DNA of 64,000 nt, taken from positions 62,001 through 126,000 of the forward strand of contig NIVC01000760.1 in assembly GCA_002269645.1 (NCBI GenBank). Direction: 5' to 3'. This DNA is from Macrostomum lignano (lineage: Eukaryota). Made by a program: the position numbers and the translations under genes. Shown one piece after another: positions 4,671 to 50,684 of this stretch (its first letter is position 1; each line of letters begins with the position of its first letter). The notes below the pieces were generated by a model. The model did no database searches. It had not been told where the DNA came from and saw nothing but the letters and a program-made list of their open reading frames with translations.

Positions 4671-5244
4671 CTCCTGTTCCCTGTTTCTATAATCCAACCA
4701 TACCCCTCTACTCTCCTTCTTTATCTACTCTCATTCCATACTCTTCTTACATACCTCTTCTTTCTATCTATCTTGCACAAGAAAATATTTTATAACGGAT
4801 ATTGGCGTGTATGAGTCACATTAAAAGATATACTCGTTAATCTGACACTTTCAGCAAAAAATTGTTTTATATTTTTTTCGATCTGCATCAGATTCATATT
4901 TCTTCTTTAATTAAGCTCTTCTGTAATATATGCTTATTTTTAATAAATTTATTTCCGCACTACTAATGTAAGTATTATTAAAGCATATAACTCTGTTTTG
5001 TATTAAAAATTACTATAATATGTAAAATTAAAATTATTTTTGCCAGCAATTTTAAGACTGAAATCACTATATGTAATGTAGAGTTATGAAATAATTTTTT
5101 AAGTGGATTTGCAATACATGTATGGCATATTCATTGTTATTTTTTCAGTTGAATTTTGCACTTTAATTGACGCTTCAGTATAAAATTTTGAGTTCTTAAT
5201 GTTCAAAATATTTACTTTATTTGAGGCTTTGTTTTAGGACTTTT

Positions 5245-8959: not shown

Positions 8960-11715
8960 TCTCACCCTCTCTCTCCCGCCCTCTCTATCTTACCCTCCCT
9001 CTCTCCCGCCCTTTCCATCTCACCCTCTCTCTCCCGCCCTTTCCATCTCACCCTCTCTCTCCCGCCCTCTCCATCTCACCCTCTCTCTCTCCCCTCTCCT
9101 CACCCTCTCTCTCCCGCTCTCTCCATCTCACCCTCTCTCTCCCGCCCTCTCCATCTCACCCTCTATCTCTCCCGCCCTTTCCATCTCACCCTCTCTCTCC
9201 CGCTCTCTCCATCTCACCCTCTCTCTCCCCTCTCCTCACCCTCTCTTTCCCGCTCTCTCCATCTCACCCCCTCTCTCCCCTCTCCTTCTCACCCTCTCCA
9301 CTCTCTCAATCTCACCCTCCTCTCTCTTCTGCCCACTCCGTCTCACCCTCTCTCTCCCGCCCTCTTCTTCTCACCCTCTCTCTCCCGCTCTCTCAATCTC
9401 ACCCTCTCCCGCCCTCTCCGTCTCACCCTGTCTCTTCCGCCCTCTCCATCTCACCCTCTCTCTCCCGCTCTCTCCATCTCACCCTCTCTCTCCCCTCTCC
9501 TTCTCACCCTCTCTCTCCCGCTCTCTCAATCTCACCCTCCTCTCTCTTCTGCCCGCTCCGTCTCACCCTCTCTCGTCCGCCCTCTTTATCTCACCCTCCC
9601 TCTCTTCCGCCCTCTCCATCTCACCCTGTCTCTTCCGCCCTCTCCATCTCACCCTCTCTCTCCCGCTCTCTCCATTTCACCCTCTCTCTCTCCCCTCTCC
9701 TTCTCACCCTCTCTCTCCCGCTCTCTCAATCTCACCCTCCTCTCTCTTCTGCCCGCTCCGTCTCACCCTCTCTCGTCCGCCCTCTTTATCTCACCCTCCC
9801 TCTCTCTCCCGCCCTCTCCTTCTCACCCTCTCTCTCCCGCTCTCTCAATCTCACCCTCCTCTCTCTTCTGACCGCTCCGTCTCACCCTCTCTCTCCCGCC
9901 CTCTCCATCTCACCCTCTCCCGCCCTCTCTATCTCACCCTGTCTCTTCCGCCCTCTCCATCTCACCCTCTCTCTCCCGCTCTCTCCATCTCACCCTCTCT
10001 CTCCCGCCCTCTCCATCTCACCCTCCTCTCTCTCCCCTCTCCTTCTCACCCTCTCTCTCCCGCTCTCTCCATCTCACCCTCTCTCTCCCGCCCTCTCCAT
10101 CTCACCCTCCTCTCTCTCCCCTCTCCTTCTCACCCTCTCTCTCCCGCTCTCTCAATCTCACCCTCCTCTCTCCTCCGCCCGCTCCGTCTCACCCTCTCTC
10201 TCCCGCTCTCTCAATCTCACCCTCCTCTCTCTCCCCTCTCCTTCTCACCCTCTCTCTCCCGCTCTCTCAATCTCACCCTCCTCTCTCCTCCGCCCGCTCC
10301 GTCTCACCCTCTCTCTCCCGCCCTCTCCATCTCACCCTCCTCTCTCTCCCCTCTCCTTCTCACCCTCTCTCTCCCGCTCTCTCCATCTCACCCTCTCTCT
10401 CCCGCCCTCTCCATCTCACCCTGCTCTCTCTCCCCTCTCCTTCTCACCCTCTCTCTCCCGCTCTCTCAATCTCACCCTCCTCTCTCCTCCGCCCGCTCCG
10501 TCTCACCCTCTCTCTCCCGCCCTCTCCATCTCACCCTCTCTCTCCCGCCCTCTCAATCTCACCCTCCTCTCTCTCCCCTCTCCTTCTCACCCTCTCTCTC
10601 CCGCTCTCTCCATCTCACCCTCTCTCTCCCGCCCTCTCCATCTCACCCTCCTCTCTCTCCCCTCTCCTTCTCACCCTCTCTCTCCCGCTCTCTTCATCTC
10701 ACCCTCTCTCTCCCGCCCTCTCCATCTCACCCTCCTCTCTCTCCCCTCTCCTTCTCACCCTCTCTCTCCCGCTCTCTCAATCTCACCCTCCTCTCTCCTC
10801 CGCCCGCTCCGTCTCACCCTCTCTCTCCCGCTCTCTCAATCTCACCCTCCTCTCTCTCCCCTCTCCTTTCACCCTCTCTCTCCCGCTCTCTCAATCTCAC
10901 CCTCCTCTCTCCTCCGCCCGCTCCGTCTCACCCTCTCTCTCCCGCCCTCTCCATCTCACCCTCCTCTCTCTCCCCTCTCCTTCTCACCCTCTCTCTCCCG
11001 CTCTCTCCATCTCACCCTCTCTCTCCCGCCCTCTCCATCTCACCCTCCTCTCTCTCCCCTCTCCTTCTCACCCTCTCTCCCCCGCTCTCTCAATCTCACC
11101 CTCCTCTCTCCTCCGCCCGCTCCGTCTCACCCTCTCTCTCCCGCCCTCTCCATCTCACCCTCTCTCTCCCGCTCTCTCAATCTCACCCTCCTCTCTCTCC
11201 CCTCTCCTTCTCACCCTCTCTCTCCCGCTCTCTCCATCTCACCCTCTCTCTCCCGCCCTCTCCATCTCACCCTCCTCTCTCTCCCCTCTCCTTCTCACCC
11301 TCTCTCTCCCGCTCTCTTCATCTCACCCTCTCTCTCCCGCCCTCTCCATCTCACCCTCCTCTCTCTCCCCTCTCCTTCTCACCCTCTCTCTCCCGCTCTC
11401 TCAATCTCACCCTCCTCTCTCCTCCGCCCGCTCCGTCTCACCCTCTCTCTCCCGCTCTCTCCGTCTCACCCTCTCTCTCCCGCCCTTTCCATCTCACCCT
11501 CCTCTCTCTCCCCTCTCCTTCTCACCCTCTCTCTCCCGCTCTCTCAATCTCACCCTCCTCTCTCTCCCCTCTCCTTCTCACCCTCTCTCCCCCGCTCTCT
11601 TAATCTCACCCTCCTCTCTCCTCCGCCCGCTCCGTCTCACCCTCTCTCGTCCGCCCTCTTTATCTCACCCTCCCTCTCTCTTCCGCCCTCTCCGTCTCAC
11701 CCTCCGTTTTTCCCG
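8960..11715. repeat. 2.75-kb polypyrimidine satellite of ~28-31-bp units (CTCACCCTCTCTCTCCCGCCCTCTCCAT) with recurring unit order
   Basis: Unit variants recur in ordered blocks; the + strand is almost all C/T. Confidence 0.95.
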
Positions 11716-44841: not shown

Positions 44842-47800
44842 TTATTTTTTCATCACTCTACTAGCAGTAGTCTCGGCGGCAGTTTTATCCCGATGTCTGC
44901 GCAGGCAATTAGTAGAACAGAATTCGTATCGATCGTAGTGAAACGGTACTTTGCCAGTGATATCGGCGGCGCATTGAAAGCAGCGCGACAGAATCAGCGG
45001 CTTCTGATTGGTGCCGCCCGCAGACTGTTGAGACGCCGCCGCTGCCGCTAGAAGACGCCGTTCGGCGGCCAGAGCCATCTTCTGGGTGTCGCTAAGAGTC
45101 TAAAAAATGTAAAAATTTGACGCTTATAAAAAATCATAATGACACCTGTATGACACCAATCATGACATCTGTGACACCAATCATGACACCTGTATGACAC
45201 CAATCATGACATCTGTGACACCAATCATGACATCTGTGACACCAATCATGACACCTGTGACACCAATCATGACACCTGTATGACACCAATCATAATGACA
45301 CCTGTATGACACCAATCATAATGACACCTGTATGACACCAATCATAATGACACCTGTATGACACCAATCATAATGACACCTGTATGACACCAATCATAAT
45401 GACACCTGTGTGACACCAATCATGACATCTGTGACACCAATCATGACACCTGTGACACCAATCATGACACCTGTATGACACCAATCATAATGACACCTGT
45501 ATGACACCAATCATAATGACACCTGTATGACACCAATCATAATGACACCTGTGTGACACCAATCATGACATCTGTGACACCAATCATGACATCTGTGACA
45601 CCAATCATGACACCTGTATGACACCAATCATGACATCTGTGACACCAATCATGACACCTGTATGACACCAATCATGACATCTGTGACACCAATCATGACA
45701 CCAATCATGACATCTGTGACACCAATCATGACACCAATCATGACATCTGTGACACCAATCATGACACCTGTATGACACCAATCATAATGACACCTGTATG
45801 ACACCAATCATAATGACACCTGTATGACACCAATCATAATGACACCTGTATGACACCAATCATAATGACACCTGTATGACACCAATCATGACACCTGTGA
45901 CACCAATCAAGACACCTGTGACACCAATCATGACACCTGTGACACCAATCATGACACCTGTATGACACCAATCATAATGAAACCTGTATGACACCAATCA
46001 TGACACCTGTATGGCACCAATCATAATGACACCTGTATGACACCAATCATAATGAAACCTGTATGCATCACATTGGCAACCCGTACCAATACTCTATCAA
46101 TCCCATTGTACCTGAAACCGCTCTCGTTCGTCGGCCTCAGCCTGAGCCGCCGCTTCGGCCGCCCGTTTCGCCCGATCCCTGTCCCGTTTAGCCGCTTTAG
46201 CCGCCCGCTTTTTATCCGCCTCTTTCAATCGGCGAGCCTCCAACTGTTCAGGAGTCAGCGGCGCGGGAATCCCGGCCGACGCGTAGTCGTGCCAATCCGG
46301 CCGTTTGGCCACAAATTTTCGAAACGCCTCGCGGACAGATTTATTACCAGCCAGCTGATATGGCGTCCGGCCAGCCAAGTCGCGCTGGCAGGGGTCAGCC
46401 CCTGACTCCAGCAGGCTGAGCACTGTCCTGCCGCAGCTGTTTGACGCGGCCAGGTGCAGCAGTGTGGCGCATTTCTGACCCAACGGCTGGCGGAGACGCT
46501 CGGCCACACTGTCCGGTTCGGAACTCGCCAACTCGGACAGCAACTGGTCCAGAGTTTCCGGATCGGCGCAGGCCACGGCAGTAAATAGCTGATTCTGGAG
46601 GGCCCAGTCGGCTGGCTGGGACGCTTCGGCGCCTGCGGGCTGAGAGCAGTTCAAGGCGACTGCAGTGCGAATCCTGGGATGGCCCAGCTACTGAGGATCT
46701 GGGAGGCTGGCTTAGCAACTGAGGCTCTGGGAGGCTGGCCCAGCAACTGAGGATCTGGGAGGCTGGCCCAGCAACTGAGGATCTGGGAGGCTGGCTCAGC
46801 AACTGACACTCTGGGAGGCTGGCCCAGCAACTGAGGATCAGGGAGGCTGGCCCAGCAACTGAGGATCTGGGAGGCTGGCTCAGCAACTGACACTCTGGGA
46901 GGCTGGCCCAGCAACTGAGGATCAGGGAGGCTGGCCCAGCAACTGAGGATCTGGGAGGCTGGCCCAGCAACTGAGGATCTGGGAGGCTGGCTCAGCAACT
47001 GAGGATCTGGGAGGCTGGCCCAGCAACTGAGGATCTGGGAGGCTGGCCCAGCAAGTGAGGATCTGGAAGGCAGGCGGCAGCGGCCAAGCAACCGGATGGT
47101 TAGTGACAGTCAACAGTCGGATATAAGCTAGCAATCCAGAACAATCAGAGATTACTTAACCAGTATTTGTACCTGATCATCATCTCCAGCTTCCAGGGGC
47201 TCCTCATCGCAGAGCTGCACTTGAAGGTTGCCATCACCGTTGTCGTCAGTCTTGACCGACTGCTCAGCAACCGCAGCAGCCGAAGTAGACGAAGACGAGG
47301 ATTTCTTCTTCCGCCTAGCAACACCGGAGGGCACCGGGGCCCGGCCGGAATGCCCCTCAGACATTGGAAACTGCTGCCGGCGTCTTGTCGGCGGCGATCG
47401 ATTCTGGCTACTCAATTTCGAGTCATCCTTGATTGAATCTTCCGTTGCTGCTGACTGGTTGCTTGGCAACATAGAAGCTGAGTGCCGCTTCAAATACAAA
47501 TTACCGTCTGGGGATTGGCTGACAATACGAAGGCCGCTCTCGATTCGATTGACCAGCTGTCGGGATTCCGCCTGGCCAATGGAGGCCGCATCAGCGTCCG
47601 AGTCGTAGACGTGCAGGCAGGCGAGCTCACGGTGCACCCGGACCAGCTCGCTGTGAGTTGGCCGCCTGGTGCTGATTGGGATGCGGCGAACTCGAGGATC
47701 TGATCTGATTAGTGCATGCGGTGGGTGATATCAGGGACTAGGAATACAGGTTGTAGATATATTGATCTGCGCGAAATTGCAGACTTCAGCTTAGATGATG

Positions 47801-50154
47801 GGGAAAATTTCATACAAATCTCAGTGGAGAGAGACTGGCAGGGAAATCTCATGTAGGATAAAGCTGGGGAGGGGAAATCTCATGTAGGATAAAGCTGGGG
47901 AGGGGAAATCTCATGTAGGATAAAGCTGGGGAGGGGAAATCTCATGTAGGATAAAGCTGGGGAGGGGAAATCTCATGTAGGATAAAGCTGGGGAGGGGAA
48001 ATCTCATGTAGGATAAAGCTGATGAGGGGAAATCTCATGTAGGATAAAGCAAGGGAGGGGAAATCTCATGTAGGATAAAGCTGGGGAGGGGAAATCTCAT
48101 GTGAGATGAAGCTGGGGACGGGAAATCTCATGTAGGATAAAGCTGGGAAGGGGAAATCTCATGTAGGATAAAGCTGGGGAGGGGAAATCTCATGTAGGAT
48201 AAAGCTGGGGAGGGGAAATCTCATGTAGGATAAACCTGGGGAGGGGAAATCTCATGTAGGATAAAGCTAGCGAGGGGAAATCTCATGTAGGATAAAGCAA
48301 GGGAGGGGAAATCTCATGTAGGATAAAGCTGGGGAGGGGAAATCTCATGTGAGATAAAGCTGGGGAGGGGAAATCTCATGTAGGATAAAGCTAGGGAGGG
48401 GAAATCTCATGTAGGAAAAGGCTAGGGAGGGGAAATCTCATGTAGGAAAAGGCTAGGGAGGGGAAATCTCATGTAGGATAAAGCTGGGGAGGGGAAATCT
48501 CATGTAGGATAAAGCTGGGGAGGGGAAATCTCATGTAGGATAAAGCTGGGGAGGGGAAATCTCATGTAGGAAAAGGCTAGGGAGGGGAAATCTCATGTAG
48601 GATAAAGCTGGGGAGGGGAAATCTCATGTAGGATAAAGCTGGGGAGGGGAAATCTCATGTAGGATAAAGCTGGGGAGGGGAAATCTCATGTAGGATAAAG
48701 CTGGGGAGGGGAAATCTCACCGAGCATAAAGCTATGATACGGAAATCCCACGGAAAAATCAGATTAGAATAAGCAGCAAATGTCCACACAAAAAACTCAC
48801 TTTGCAATCGGCGATGGAGGGCCTAGAAAGATGGCCTGCTGCTGCTTACTAATCCGAATCAATACGAAATGACAAGCGTTCAATTCGTCAGTCCACGAGG
48901 CCAGCAGGTTTTGAATCTTCTCGCGCAGATGCGCCTCGCAACGGCGCCGAAGATTGGCGCCGGCAGATTTCGGTCCGCTAGCGCCGCCAGATTGAGAATC
49001 GCGCGCGCTCTGCAGTCCGCCCTGGCGTTTCCGTACGGCGTATTGGTGAAACGTTTTGTGAGCCACGGCTCGGCCAGATTCGTCAAATATTGCGCCGGCG
49101 AAATGACCGCCGGCTAGCATTAGAATTGCCCAGCGAAGCATTCTCGGCAGGGCGGCGGCTCGGCTCAGCAGAGACTCTTCGCTTGGGGCGGGCAGGTCGA
49201 ATAGGCATCGGGCTATGCTCACGTACTCGCGGTCTTTGTTTAGGAAGAACAGACGGCCCGACTGGCTGAGCAGCTGGTGACGGGAGAGCGACGCAAAGCT
49301 GCCGTCTGACTGGCCACCGGCCTGCGGGGTCGGGGCGAGGATTCAGGGGCTAGGGGTTGAGGGGGATTCTTATCTGTAGGGGTTGAGGGGGATTCTTATC
49401 TGCAGGGGTTGAGGGGCGATTCTTATCTGTAGGGGTTGAGGGGCGATTCTTATCTGCAGGGGTTGAGGGGCGATTCTTATCTGCAGGGGTTAAGGGGCGA
49501 TTCTTATCTGTAGGGGTTGAGGGGGGGTTCTTATCTGTAGGGGTTGAGGGTCGATTCTTATCTGCAGGGGTTGAGGGGCGATTCTTATCTGTAAGGACGT
49601 TAGGGGCGATTTTTTTCGCAGCGATATTTTAAGCAGCTAATTTTCAGCTTACCTTGGCATCATTATTTTTAGCATAACTATTATTATCGTTCTCGGAGCT
49701 CGACGAATCCGAATCGTCTTCATCTTCATCGCCCGAGAGGCTGGACAGATCGGACGAAGCAAGCGAGCCGTCAGGTCCCGCTGCTCCACCGCCGTTGATC
49801 AGATTGATCGAATTCGGCTTCGCTAATACAAGCCTGTTGCTTAGCAACCCGATGCCGATTGTACAGATGCCAATCGGAGCGGAAATGCTCGCGCTGCTCG
49901 GCGCAACTGGAGAACTGCTCGCCGCATGTGGCGCATTGGAAAGAATCTAACTGCTGCTGCTGCTTTTGCTGCTCCTGGGGGAATAGGTTGAATTTACCTT
50001 TTAGCTTATCAAGCTGTCAATCTGCTTTTCCATGTGTCTGTTTGTATGGCTGTCTTTCCGTCAGTCTGTCTGCCTGCCTGCCTGTCTGTCTATCTGTCTG
50101 TCTGTCTGCCTGCCTGCCTGTCTGTCTATCTGTCTGTCTGTTTATCTGTCGTCC

Positions 50155-50291: not shown

Positions 50292-50627
50292 GCCTGCCTG
50301 TCTGTCTATCTGTCTGTCTGTTTATCTGTCGTCCTGTCTGTCTGTCTATCTGTCTGTCTGTCTAGCAATCACTGCATCAAGCAAAACCCGCACACAGTAC
50401 CTGTTGCTCTTCAGCCGCAGCCTGGGCAGCAGTCTCAGCAGCGGATGAGCTGGTGCTCAACCTGGCAACACCGTCGGCATCGTGATACAGGAGTCGCAGG
50501 CCGGTCAGCAGTTCGGTGCTCTGCTTGAAATTAAACAGCGGCACAGTGCCGCAGGTGCGCTGGCAATGACGGGGCACAAGGCCGTCCAGTCTAGCTCGCT
50601 GATTCTGCGGCTGCGACTGCTGCTTCT
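44842..50627 (-). CDS. ANKZF1: ANKZF1/Vms1 (C2H2 zinc finger, VLRF1 release-factor-like domain, ankyrin repeats, coiled coil, C-terminal Cys/His motif); one +1 frameshift in this sequence; start codon not located
   Basis: Exons ~50627-50401, 49974-49653 (frame change inside), 49321-48801, 47704-47173, ~46639-46112, 45099-44842. Motifs: CATCGEQFSSCAEQREHFRSDWHLYN; DLSSLSG; WAILMLAGGHFAGAIF; HKTFHQYAVRKRQGGLQ; SAGANLRR; DPRVRRIPISTRRPTHSELVRV; TLLHLAA...GADPCQRDLAGRTPY; CFQCAADITGKVPFHYDRYEFCSTNCLRRH. Confidence 0.9.
45135..46075. repeat. 21-26-bp repeat (ATGACACCTGTATGACACCAATCATA)n, last ANKZF1 intron
   Basis: Direct inspection. Confidence 0.95.
46675..47070 (-). repeat. 28-bp family A, array 4, ANKZF1 intron
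   Basis: About 14 units. Confidence 0.95.
47838..48720. repeat. 31-bp repeat (GGGGAAATCTCATGTAGGATAAAGCTGGGGA)n, ANKZF1 intron
   Basis: Period 31. Confidence 0.95.
49355..49610. repeat. 26/27-bp repeat (GGGGCGATTCTTATCTGCAGGGGTTGA)n, ANKZF1 intron
   Basis: Direct inspection. Confidence 0.9.
50035..50362. repeat. (CTGT)n-based compound microsatellite, ANKZF1 intron
   Basis: Direct inspection. Confidence 0.9.
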
Positions 50628-50684
50628 CTACAGTGGCCAGCAATCAGGTAGGTGAGGATTCAGGACTAGGATTACCTTTACAGC

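What the first reader, a model, noticed from the sequence alone, without database searches (positions are those of the whole stretch)
49653..49974. ANKZF1/Vms1 zinc-finger exon needs a +1 frameshift; the first frame ends at ACC-UGA-C
Seen: from the phase-0 acceptor at 49974 the frame reads ...CATCGEQFSSCAEQREHFRSDWHLYNRHRVAKQQACISEAEFDQSDQRRWSSGT* (TGA 49773-49771). The conserved DLSSLSG acidic tract and the phase-0 donor at 49653 lie in the +1 frame. Both frames are open across about 49950-49771. It is the only frameshift in ~11 kb of coding sequence rebuilt here. Known: ANKZF1/Vms1 is an eRF1-like ribosome-quality-control factor; prfB (CUU-UGA-C) and antizyme (UCC-UGA) use autoregulatory +1 shifts at a UGA; a stop ~118 nt above an exon junction would normally trigger NMD. 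Inference: this could be recoding-based control of a ribosome-rescue factor. The more mundane and more likely explanations are a 1-nt consensus error (removing the T at 49803 gives FDQLINGGGAAGPDG, which reads naturally) or a disabled paralog.
Basis: partly seen in the sequence, partly recalled or inferred. Interest (0 to 1): 0.7.

Follow-up and report, generated by a model that had tools for sequence, protein, structure and literature searches.

The report
Frameshift private to one gene copy
The apparent frameshift in this flatworm ribosome-rescue gene is a one-base defect found in only one of the genome's three copies of the gene, so it is an assembly error or a freshly broken spare copy, not a programmed recoding signal.

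Summary
On the minus strand, exon 49974-49653 reads the C2H2 zinc finger in one frame to TGA 49773-49771. The DLSSLSG acidic tract and the donor lie in the +1 frame.

The window is Macrostomum lignano, assembly Mlig_3_7, contig NIVC01000760.1. This worm is a neopolyploid with three homeologous subgenomes. Two other contigs of the same assembly carry syntenic copies of the gene, each annotated with a 798-residue product.

The copy I could read (L003) is identical across the 322-nt exon except at 49804-49803. The window has CAATCTG where L003 has CAG-CTG. The ACC-TGA-C heptamer is identical there and is read as G-P-D. It is only the first out-of-frame stop after a private one-base net insertion.

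Programmed +1 frameshifting is rejected. Whether the extra base is in the worm's DNA cannot be settled without reads. I lean to an uncorrected assembly error (about 0.55) over a young disabled homeolog (about 0.4):
- The copy shows purifying selection.
- A sibling contig has a G5-to-G4 frameshift in an otherwise identical exon.
- Splice-acceptor bases in these loci were overwritten by spliced-leader RNA-seq reads.
- 18% of transcripts have shortened ORFs on this assembly.

The parts
50638..50645 (-). Octamer gattgcTg immediately 5' of exon 1. It is the SL trans-splice acceptor, true sequence probably gattgcag. Position -2 carries the spliced-leader base, which I read as a polishing artefact.
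   Evidence: The L003 copy reads gattCATg. Every differing base equals the SL 3' end (..TTGCATG, PMC8629364) in ungapped register. The acceptor motif [T/C]TNCAG is reported in the same paper.
50401..50637 (-). Exon 1 of the ANKZF1/Vms1 homeolog, starting at GCC (Ala2). There is no genomic ATG. An in-frame TGA lies at 50646-50644, and the AUG is supplied by the spliced leader.
   Evidence: The annotated CDS of the L003 copy starts at the homologous GCC (L003 3299) with 798 residues. My rebuild with a leading Met is 799 aa.
49653..49974 (-). Exon 2, the zinc-finger exon and the finding itself. It is 322 nt here and 321 nt in the intact copy.
49867..49935 (-). C2H2 zinc finger CATCGEQFSSCAEQREHFRSDWH (C-x2-C-x12-H-x5-H), in the first frame.
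   Evidence: It matches the HFKSDWHRFN fingers of orthologues P0002 and P0003.
49803..49804 (-). The lesion. The window has AT where the sibling homeolog has G (CAATCTG versus CAG-CTG), a net +1 nt. It is the only difference in the 351 aligned bases of exon 2 plus flanks.
   Evidence: (alignment A1).
49771..49773 (-). TGA, the first out-of-frame stop after the lesion. In the intact copy these bases are part of GGA CCT GAC (G-P-D).
49692..49751 (-). Conserved acidic and serine-rich tract DLSSLSGDEDEDDSDSSSSE, in the +1 frame of this copy.
   Evidence: Orthologues have D[IV]SSISGS[ED] 26-33 residues after the finger in one frame.
48801..49321 (-). Exon 3, the VLRF1 domain. It holds the Met (49141-49139) at which the GenBank protein PAA77167.1 (P0001, 552 aa) starts, and the conserved Gln loop RKRQGGLQSARD (49033-48998).
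   Evidence: It is 100% identical to L003.
47173..47704 (-). Exon 4, with the conserved IPISTRRPT motif at 47676-47647.
46112..46639 (-). Exon 5, ankyrin repeats and a coiled coil.
44842..45099 (-). Exon 6, the VATC treble-clef domain and the stop codon TAA (44844-44842).

Best explanation
The frame break is a one-base net insertion (G replaced by AT at 49804-49803). It is private to this one of three homeologous copies of the Macrostomum lignano ANKZF1/Vms1 gene. ACC-UGA-C is simply the first stop met in the wrong frame, and no ribosomal recoding is involved. I put about 0.97 on this part.

The most likely cause is a base error left in the Canu (PacBio CLR) plus Pilon assembly Mlig_3_7. The three copies of this exon are otherwise identical. 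Short reads from this copy would therefore map perfectly to the sibling contigs rather than to the erroneous one, and polishing could not correct it (inference). On this reading the real gene copy is intact. Its mRNA is SL trans-spliced at GCC (50637), takes its AUG from the spliced leader, and encodes a 799-residue protein: zinc finger, VLRF1, ankyrin, VATC. The confidence given below is for this cause.
For: Shown:
1. The window is GCA_002269645.1 contig NIVC01000760.1. That assembly was built with Canu from PacBio reads and polished by Pilon with Illumina DNA and RNA-seq (PMC5730564).
2. Contigs NIVC01000051.1 (L003) and NIVC01001145.1 (L002) carry the same gene order. Both have ANKZF1 products of 798 residues. 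M. lignano DV1 has three subgenomes, S, L1 and L2, with 1.4-2.4% SNP divergence (PMC10733133).
3. Exon 2 of L003 differs from the window only at the lesion and reads one continuous frame. The whole L003 CDS rebuilds to an intact 799-aa ORF with all splice sites conserved.
4. In exons 4-6 the changes private to the window copy are 7 synonymous and 2 non-synonymous. P = 0.0013 under neutrality. The copy was therefore under purifying selection until very recently, if not still.
5. The same three-contig block has another private 1-nt frameshift. It is a G5-to-G4 homopolymer contraction in a Rad21 exon of L002 that is otherwise 100% identical in all three copies. This is the classic long-read error signature.
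6. Base-level artefacts are demonstrable in these loci. At two SL trans-splice acceptors the copies differ only by bases that equal the spliced-leader 3' end in ungapped register: 5 of 5 at the Rad21 site against L002's TTGCAG, and 4 more at the ANKZF1 site.
7. The authors report that 18.4% of de novo transcripts have a shorter ORF on Mlig_3_7 (Suppl. Fig. 4c).
8. In exons 1-3 plus the Rad21 exon (about 1.3 kb) the copies differ by one SNP and two frameshifting indels. That ratio is typical of long-read consensus errors, not of evolution (inference).
Against: - The change is not a homopolymer-length error. It is a complex G-to-AT change in a non-repetitive context (the palindrome CAGCTG), which is less typical of PacBio consensus errors.
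- The assembly was polished with both DNA and RNA reads, yet the base survived.
- A neopolyploid with three redundant copies is just where young inactivating mutations are expected.
- No reads or cDNA could be examined here. The protein databases searched held no M. lignano transcript-derived protein covering this exon.
Confidence: 0.55

Rival explanations
1. The extra base is real. One of the three homeologs has just acquired a frameshift and is a nascent unprocessed pseudogene, an early step of gene fractionation after whole-genome duplication. Its mRNA would end translation at UGA 118 nt before an exon junction. It would then be degraded by NMD, or yield a 146-residue zinc-finger fragment. 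The two sibling copies supply the function.
For: - Three redundant homeologs exist, and two of them are intact.
- The lesion is a complex, non-homopolymer change that survived Pilon polishing with DNA and RNA reads.
- GenBank annotates this copy as a 552-aa protein starting at the first Met downstream of the break.
Against: - There is no sign of relaxed constraint on this copy (7 synonymous to 2 non-synonymous private changes, P = 0.0013), so the lesion would have to be very recent.
- Exons 1-3 are otherwise identical to L003 apart from one synonymous SNP.
- The 'lost ATG' that first looked like a second lesion is not one. The AUG comes from the spliced leader, and the bases there are polishing artefacts.
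- The ML2-based UniProt model (P0014) also starts at MLRW. That is explained by the absence of any Met between the SL AUG and residue 248, so it is not independent support.
- Assembly frameshifts are demonstrably common here.
Confidence: 0.4
2. Programmed +1 ribosomal frameshifting at ACC-UGA-C restores the full-length protein and autoregulates a ribosome-rescue factor, in the manner of prfB or antizyme.
For: - Both frames are open across the overlap, and a UGA followed by C is a weak stop context (established knowledge).
- Modest RNA structure is predicted around and downstream of the stop (z = -1.97, 8 of 200 shuffles fold as well).
Against: - The frameshift requirement is not conserved even within the genome. 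Two of three homeologs read one frame, and the identical heptamer is in-frame G-P-D there.
- Distant orthologues have the finger and the acidic tract in one frame.
- The frame break maps 30 nt upstream of the UGA, not at it.
- ACC to CCU re-pairing of the P-site tRNA is poor compared with CUU-U or UCC-U (established knowledge).
- The predicted hairpin contains the stop itself rather than lying 3' of it.
- No literature links ANKZF1 or Vms1 to programmed frameshifting.
Confidence: 0.01
3. The frame is restored at the RNA level, by a tiny intron, an alternative splice site or RNA editing inside exon 2.
For: None beyond the need to restore the frame.
Against: The only GT..AG between the last conserved finger-frame residues and the stop is GTGGAGCAG. 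It is 9 nt, a multiple of 3 and far too short (inspection). There is no usable donor between 49830 and 49771. The sibling copy needs no such event.
Confidence: 0.01

Closest known systems
Residual indel errors of long-read (PacBio CLR) assemblies in duplicated or polyploid regions that short-read polishing cannot reach
   Same: A single private 1-nt frame break sits in an exon otherwise identical to its paralogs. The assembly was made by Canu plus Pilon. A sibling contig has a homopolymer frameshift, and the authors report 18.4% of transcripts with shortened ORFs.
   Different: The change is a complex G-to-AT change rather than a homopolymer-length error. It could not be checked against reads here.
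Unprocessed pseudogenes and homeolog fractionation after whole-genome duplication
   Same: One of three syntenic homeologs carries a disabling frameshift while the others are intact.
   Different: There is no relaxed constraint on the affected copy (7 synonymous to 2 non-synonymous), no second lesion, and all splice sites are intact. If real, the lesion is extremely young.
Programmed +1 frameshifting at a stop codon (bacterial prfB CUU-UGA-C, eukaryotic antizyme UCC-UGA)
   Same: A UGA sits in the zero frame with the continuation in +1. The gene product acts on ribosomes, so an autoregulatory story can be imagined.
   Different: The frame break is not conserved in paralogs or orthologues. It lies 30 nt upstream of the stop. 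There is no slippery P-site codon and no convincing stimulator.
ANKZF1 (human) and Vms1 (yeast), VLRF1-domain peptidyl-tRNA release factors of ribosome-associated quality control
   Same: The architecture matches: N-terminal C2H2 finger, acidic Ser-rich tract, VLRF1 domain with a conserved Gln loop, ankyrin repeats, coiled coil and C-terminal VATC treble clef.
   Different: Nothing functional. This assembled copy is interrupted, and 247 N-terminal residues are missing from the GenBank protein.
Spliced-leader-donated AUG start codons in flatworms (the Schistosoma and Macrostomum SLs end in AUG)
   Same: Exon 1 has no genomic ATG and an in-frame stop lies just upstream. The SL ends ..TTGCATG and joins in frame at GCC. 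The annotated sibling CDS is 5'-partial from that base.
   Different: This concerns the gene's start, not the finding. It is inferred from sequence and annotation, not from reads.

Membership tests
Programmed +1 ribosomal frameshift site (prfB / antizyme type) | The requirement for the frameshift is conserved in orthologues and paralogs | tested here: not met
   L003 reads one frame through the same exon. L002 is annotated with the same 798-residue product. Orthologues P0002 and P0003 have the finger and the acidic tract in one frame.
Programmed +1 ribosomal frameshift site (prfB / antizyme type) | The frame change occurs at the stop codon on a shift-prone P-site codon | tested here: not met
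   The alignment places the extra base at 49803, 30 nt upstream of the TGA. The ACC-to-CCU shift gives poor tRNA re-pairing (established knowledge, by inspection).
Programmed +1 ribosomal frameshift site (prfB / antizyme type) | A stimulatory RNA element lies 3' of the shift site | tested here: inconclusive
   The fold of 49790-49660 gives z = -1.97, and 8 of 200 shuffles fold as well. The first hairpin encloses the UGA rather than following it. The same sequence is present in the intact copy.
Programmed +1 ribosomal frameshift site (prfB / antizyme type) | A trans-frame protein product is made | not testable with these tools
   This needs mass spectrometry, ribosome profiling or a reporter assay.
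ANKZF1 / Vms1 (VLRF1 release factors) | VLRF1 domain | tested here: met
   Pfam PF18826 with E = 1.3e-48 on P0001 and 6.8e-47 on the rebuilt full-length sibling.
ANKZF1 / Vms1 (VLRF1 release factors) | Conserved glutamine loop of the VLRF1 domain | tested here: met
   RKRQGGLQSARD (49033-48998) lines up by eye with RAKQGTAQTAHD in P0002 and RAKAGKRQSAKD in P0003. No formal alignment was made.
ANKZF1 / Vms1 (VLRF1 release factors) | N-terminal C2H2 zinc finger followed by an acidic Ser-rich tract | tested here: met
   A C-x2-C-x12-H-x5-H finger lies at 49935-49867 and DLSSLSGDEDEDD at 49751-49692. They are in one frame only in the sibling copy. Pfam finds only a sub-threshold zinc-finger match.
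ANKZF1 / Vms1 (VLRF1 release factors) | Ankyrin repeats and a C-terminal VATC / p97-binding region | tested here: met
   VATC PF18716 with E = 3.8e-13. The Ank match is below the curated cut-off (18.1 bits against 21.1).
Unprocessed pseudogene (disabled homeolog) | A disabling lesion present in genomic DNA, not only in the assembly | not testable with these tools
   No reads were available. The lesion is in the assembly.
Unprocessed pseudogene (disabled homeolog) | Relaxed selective constraint on the disabled copy | tested here: not met
   Private changes in exons 4-6 are 7 synonymous and 2 non-synonymous. P(at least 7 of 9 | neutral) = 0.0013.
Unprocessed pseudogene (disabled homeolog) | An intact paralog is able to supply the function | tested here: met
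   L003 rebuilds to an intact 799-aa ORF. L002 is annotated with 798 aa.
Assembly or polishing base error | The variant base is absent from raw reads | not testable with these tools
   This needs a k-mer count in SRX2866466-94 and SRX1063031.
Assembly or polishing base error | Comparable base errors are demonstrable in the same assembly region | tested here: met
   L002 has a G5-to-G4 change in an otherwise identical Rad21 exon. Spliced-leader bases are written over trans-splice acceptors at two sites. 18.4% of transcripts have shortened ORFs.

The most novel reading that the evidence does not exclude
The extra base is real, and the frameshifted homeolog is expressed and partly rescued by low-level +1 frameshifting at ACC-UGA-C, or instead makes a stand-alone 146-residue zinc-finger fragment. 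Either way, one of three copies of a ribosome-rescue factor would have a new, translation-dependent mode of regulation in a neopolyploid.
Probability: 0.01. Interest if true: 0.6.

Novelty: not a real feature. Interest (0 to 1): 0.07.

Why it matters
As a recoding candidate it does not matter, because the sibling copies show the gene is normally read in one frame. The result has practical value for users of the Mlig_3_7 assembly.
- GenBank protein PAA77167.1 (552 aa) lacks 247 N-terminal residues because of this base.
- The neighbouring Rad21 model on another contig is truncated by a homopolymer frameshift.
- Bases at SL trans-splice acceptors appear to have been overwritten by spliced-leader sequence during RNA-seq polishing, which creates or destroys apparent ATG codons.

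If the lesion proved real, it would be one ordinary data point on early homeolog loss after whole-genome duplication.

Tried and rejected
1. A second lesion. The sibling copy has ATG where the window has CTG at 50640-50638, and I first read this as start-codon loss supporting pseudogenisation. I rejected that reading. The bases 5' of GCC match the spliced-leader tail in both copies, the same pattern occurs at the Rad21 trans-splice site, and the sibling CDS is annotated from GCC. The AUG comes from the SL.
2. The ML2 assembly's UniProt model (P0014) as independent evidence for the frameshift. It starts at MLRW like the GenBank protein. However, there is no Met between the SL AUG and residue 248, so any ATG-requiring gene caller would start there. 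Rejected as evidence.
3. A micro-intron or alternative splice inside exon 2. There is none (GTGGAGCAG is only 9 nt).
4. Overwriting by spliced-leader or exon-junction RNA-seq reads at the cryptic acceptor GATCAG|CTG as the cause of the exon-2 lesion. The observed CAATCTG fits neither the ungapped nor the 1-nt-gapped prediction.
5. Same-species transcripts or congeneric orthologues in the protein collection. There are none. The closest hit outside M. lignano is 32% identical.
6. The 5' exons of the third copy (L002). They lie about 3 kb beyond the 10-kb flank.
7. RNA structure near the stop. It is unremarkable.
8. Whole-locus BLAST between copies. It was swamped by micro- and minisatellites. 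Exon-wise comparison was used instead.
Full report
**What is there.** All of the following is on the minus strand.
- The window contains a six-exon gene for an ANKZF1/Vms1-type protein.
- Exon 2 (49974-49653) opens with a phase-0 acceptor.
- It encodes a C2H2 finger (CATCGEQFSSCAEQREHFRSDWH, 49935-49867) in one frame, which runs on to ...ISEAEFDQSDQRRWSSGT and TGA at 49773-49771.
- The conserved acidic tract DLSSLSGDEDEDD (49751-49692) and the phase-0 donor at 49653 are in the +1 frame.
- Both frames are open over 49946-49774, and the stop lies 118 nt before the exon junction.

**Where the window comes from.**
- A protein search with the conceptual exon 1-3 product returned a 100% match to GenBank PAA77167.1. 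This is BOX15_Mlig018479g3 of the flatworm Macrostomum lignano, 552 aa, with VLRF1 and VATC domains. It starts at Met (49141) inside exon 3, downstream of the frame break.
- The encoding contig is NIVC01000760.1 of assembly GCA_002269645.1, known as Mlig_3_7.
- That assembly was built with Canu from PacBio CLR reads. It was polished with Pilon using Illumina genomic reads and RNA-seq reads (PMC5730564).
- M. lignano DV1 is a neopolyploid with three homeologous subgenomes (S, L1, L2). They differ by about 1.4-2.4% in SNPs, and the assembly largely keeps them as separate contigs (PMC10733133).

**The sibling copies.**
- No protein containing the zinc-finger exon was in the searchable collection. 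I therefore went through the downstream neighbour, a Rad21/Rec8 gene (Mlig018479g4).
- Its 90% cluster holds two further GenBank proteins on other Mlig_3_7 contigs.
- Fetching them gave L002 (NIVC01001145.1) and L003 (NIVC01000051.1). Both have the order ANKZF1 then Rad21, and L003 also shows the end of a PAXIP1-like gene upstream, as in the window. Both ANKZF1 products are annotated at 798 residues with VLRF1 and VATC.
- Exons are 98.3-100% identical to the window, whereas introns are 91-97% identical with many indels and different tandem-repeat lengths. These are distinct loci, not the same reads assembled twice.

**The decisive comparison.**
- Exon 2 plus flanks (351 nt) of L003 aligns to the window with a single difference. 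The window has GATCAATCTGATC and L003 has GATCAG-CTGATC, so G is replaced by AT at 49804-49803.
- L003 therefore reads EQQKQQQQLDSFQCATCGEQF...ISEAEFDQLINGGGAAGPDGSLASSDLSSLSGDEDEDD...DAK in one frame.
- Its whole CDS rebuilds to an uninterrupted 799-codon ORF with every splice site conserved.
- The heptamer ACC TGA C is identical in L003 but is read G|GA CCT GAC| as Gly-Pro-Asp.
- The 5' exons of L002 lie outside the fetched flank. Its annotated product has the same 798 residues as L003's, which requires the same continuous frame.
- Distant orthologues (P0002, P0003) also carry the finger and a D[IV]SSISGS[ED] tract 26-33 residues later in one polypeptide.

The frame break is thus private to this copy and lies 30 nt upstream of the UGA. 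Programmed +1 frameshifting fails its main defining test, conservation. It also lacks a shift-prone codon and a convincing stimulator (fold z = -1.97, with a hairpin that encloses the stop). No paper links ANKZF1 to programmed frameshifting.

**A false lead worth recording.**
- L003 has ATG where the window has CTG at 50640-50638. This looked like a second disabling lesion.
- It is not. The M. lignano spliced leader is CGGTCTCTTACTGCGAAGACTCAATTTATTGCATG, and trans-splice acceptors follow [T/C]TNCAG (PMC8629364).
- The annotated L003 CDS starts at GCC, the base after that 'ATG', with 798 residues. An in-frame TGA lies two codons upstream. There is no Met between residue 1 and residue 248. The AUG is therefore donated by the SL, in frame: AUG|GCC ACU.
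- The bases just 5' of the junction differ among copies only by taking the SL's base in ungapped register. At the ANKZF1 site the window has gattgcTg and L003 has gattCATg. At the Rad21 site L002 has aattgcag (a proper acceptor), L003 has aattgcTg and the window has aaTGCATg.
- At the Rad21 site, where L002 supplies the reference, 5 of 5 altered bases equal the SL base. Chance is about 0.004.
- The simplest cause is that SL-bearing RNA-seq reads, aligned end to end, outvoted genomic reads during Pilon polishing (inference).
- This also explains why the ML2-based UniProt model P0014 starts at MLRW. That model therefore says nothing about the frameshift.

**Error or real mutation?** This cannot be settled without reads.

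For an assembly error:
- The changes private to the window copy in exons 4-6 are 7 synonymous to 2 non-synonymous. P = 0.0013 under neutrality, with 24.9% synonymous sites. The copy has been under purifying selection.
- Exons 1-3 are otherwise identical to L003 except for one synonymous SNP.
- A second private frameshift exists in the same block. It is a G5-to-G4 contraction in a Rad21 exon of L002 that is otherwise 100% identical in all three copies, and it explains the truncated 483-aa annotation P0021.
- The authors' own benchmark finds 18.4% of de novo transcripts with a shorter ORF on Mlig_3_7.
- Polishing cannot repair an error in an exon that is identical in the paralogs, because short reads align perfectly elsewhere (inference).

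For a real lesion:
- The change is complex and non-homopolymeric.
- It survived polishing.
- Triple redundancy makes young knock-outs plausible.

I put about 0.55 on error, about 0.40 on a very young disabled homeolog, and about 0.01 each on recoding and on RNA-level repair.

**Family and function.** The gene is a bona fide ANKZF1/Vms1 orthologue. It has the following features:
- VLRF1 domain (Pfam E = 1e-48).
- Gln loop RKRQGGLQSARD.
- C2H2 finger.
- Ankyrin repeats (sub-threshold Pfam match).
- VATC treble clef (E = 4e-13).

By homology, the intact protein would release or cleave peptidyl-tRNA from stalled 60S subunits in ribosome-associated quality control (established knowledge).

**Verdict.** This is an ordinary artefact or spare-copy defect, not a recoding site. 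It is of low interest apart from the practical warning about base-level artefacts in this public assembly.

Noticed in passing
window 50645-50638 and 44476-44469 (minus strand); L003 3291-3298 and about 9987-9994; L002 about 4823-4830: At two SL trans-splice acceptors (ANKZF1 and Rad21), the three homeologous contigs differ only by bases that equal the 3' end of the spliced leader (..TTGCATG) in ungapped register: TTGCAG, TTGCTG, TGCATG and TTCATG. This looks like acceptor bases overwritten by SL-bearing RNA-seq reads during Pilon polishing. It creates a spurious genomic ATG in L003.
   Followed up: partly
window 50646-50635 (minus strand): The ANKZF1 mRNA appears to take its start codon from the spliced leader. 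Exon 1 begins at GCC, an in-frame TGA lies two codons upstream, and there is no Met until residue 248. The sibling CDS is annotated 5'-partial from GCC.
   Followed up: partly
L002 9006-9012 (equivalent to window about 40226-40222, minus strand): There is a private 1-nt frameshift (G5 to G4) in a Rad21/Rec8 exon of contig NIVC01001145.1. The exon is otherwise 100% identical in all three copies. This explains why GenBank PAA71695.1 (483 aa) starts at an internal Met.
   Followed up: yes
L003 7405 (equivalent to window 47664, minus strand): The otherwise intact L003 homeolog carries Arg-to-Trp in the conserved IPxxxRRPT motif. It has 5 synonymous and 4 non-synonymous private changes, so it looks more relaxed than the 'broken' window copy.
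   Followed up: partly
window about 57000-35000 (minus strand): The PAXIP1-like (BRCT), ANKZF1 and Rad21/Rec8 genes lie head to tail on one strand. ANKZF1 and Rad21 share a transcriptional-unit name (Mlig018479 g3 and g4). About 370 nt separate the ANKZF1 stop (44842) from the Rad21 trans-splice site (44468). The ML2 gene model P0014 fuses them. This is probably an SL-resolved operon.
   Followed up: no
window 50905-50650, 50361-50020, 49640-49350, 52789-51887, 47110-46700, 46065-45130: The introns and the spacer upstream of ANKZF1 are packed with micro- and minisatellites: (CAGA)n, a 28-nt unit, a roughly 36-nt unit and others. Their lengths differ between homeologs, so they would serve as copy-specific PCR anchors.
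   Followed up: no
window 50637-48801 compared with 47704-44842 (minus strand): Exons 1-3 are almost identical between the window and L003 (1 SNP in 1,083 nt apart from the lesion). Exons 4-6 differ by 1.4%. This may reflect recent gene conversion of the 5' half between homeologs.
   Followed up: no
protein collection: The 798-aa ANKZF1 and the 1,642/1,645-aa PAXIP1-like GenBank proteins appear in the gene-position tables. Yet search for homologous proteins did not return them, although they are about 99-100% identical to the queries. The searchable protein set is incomplete for this genome.
   Followed up: no
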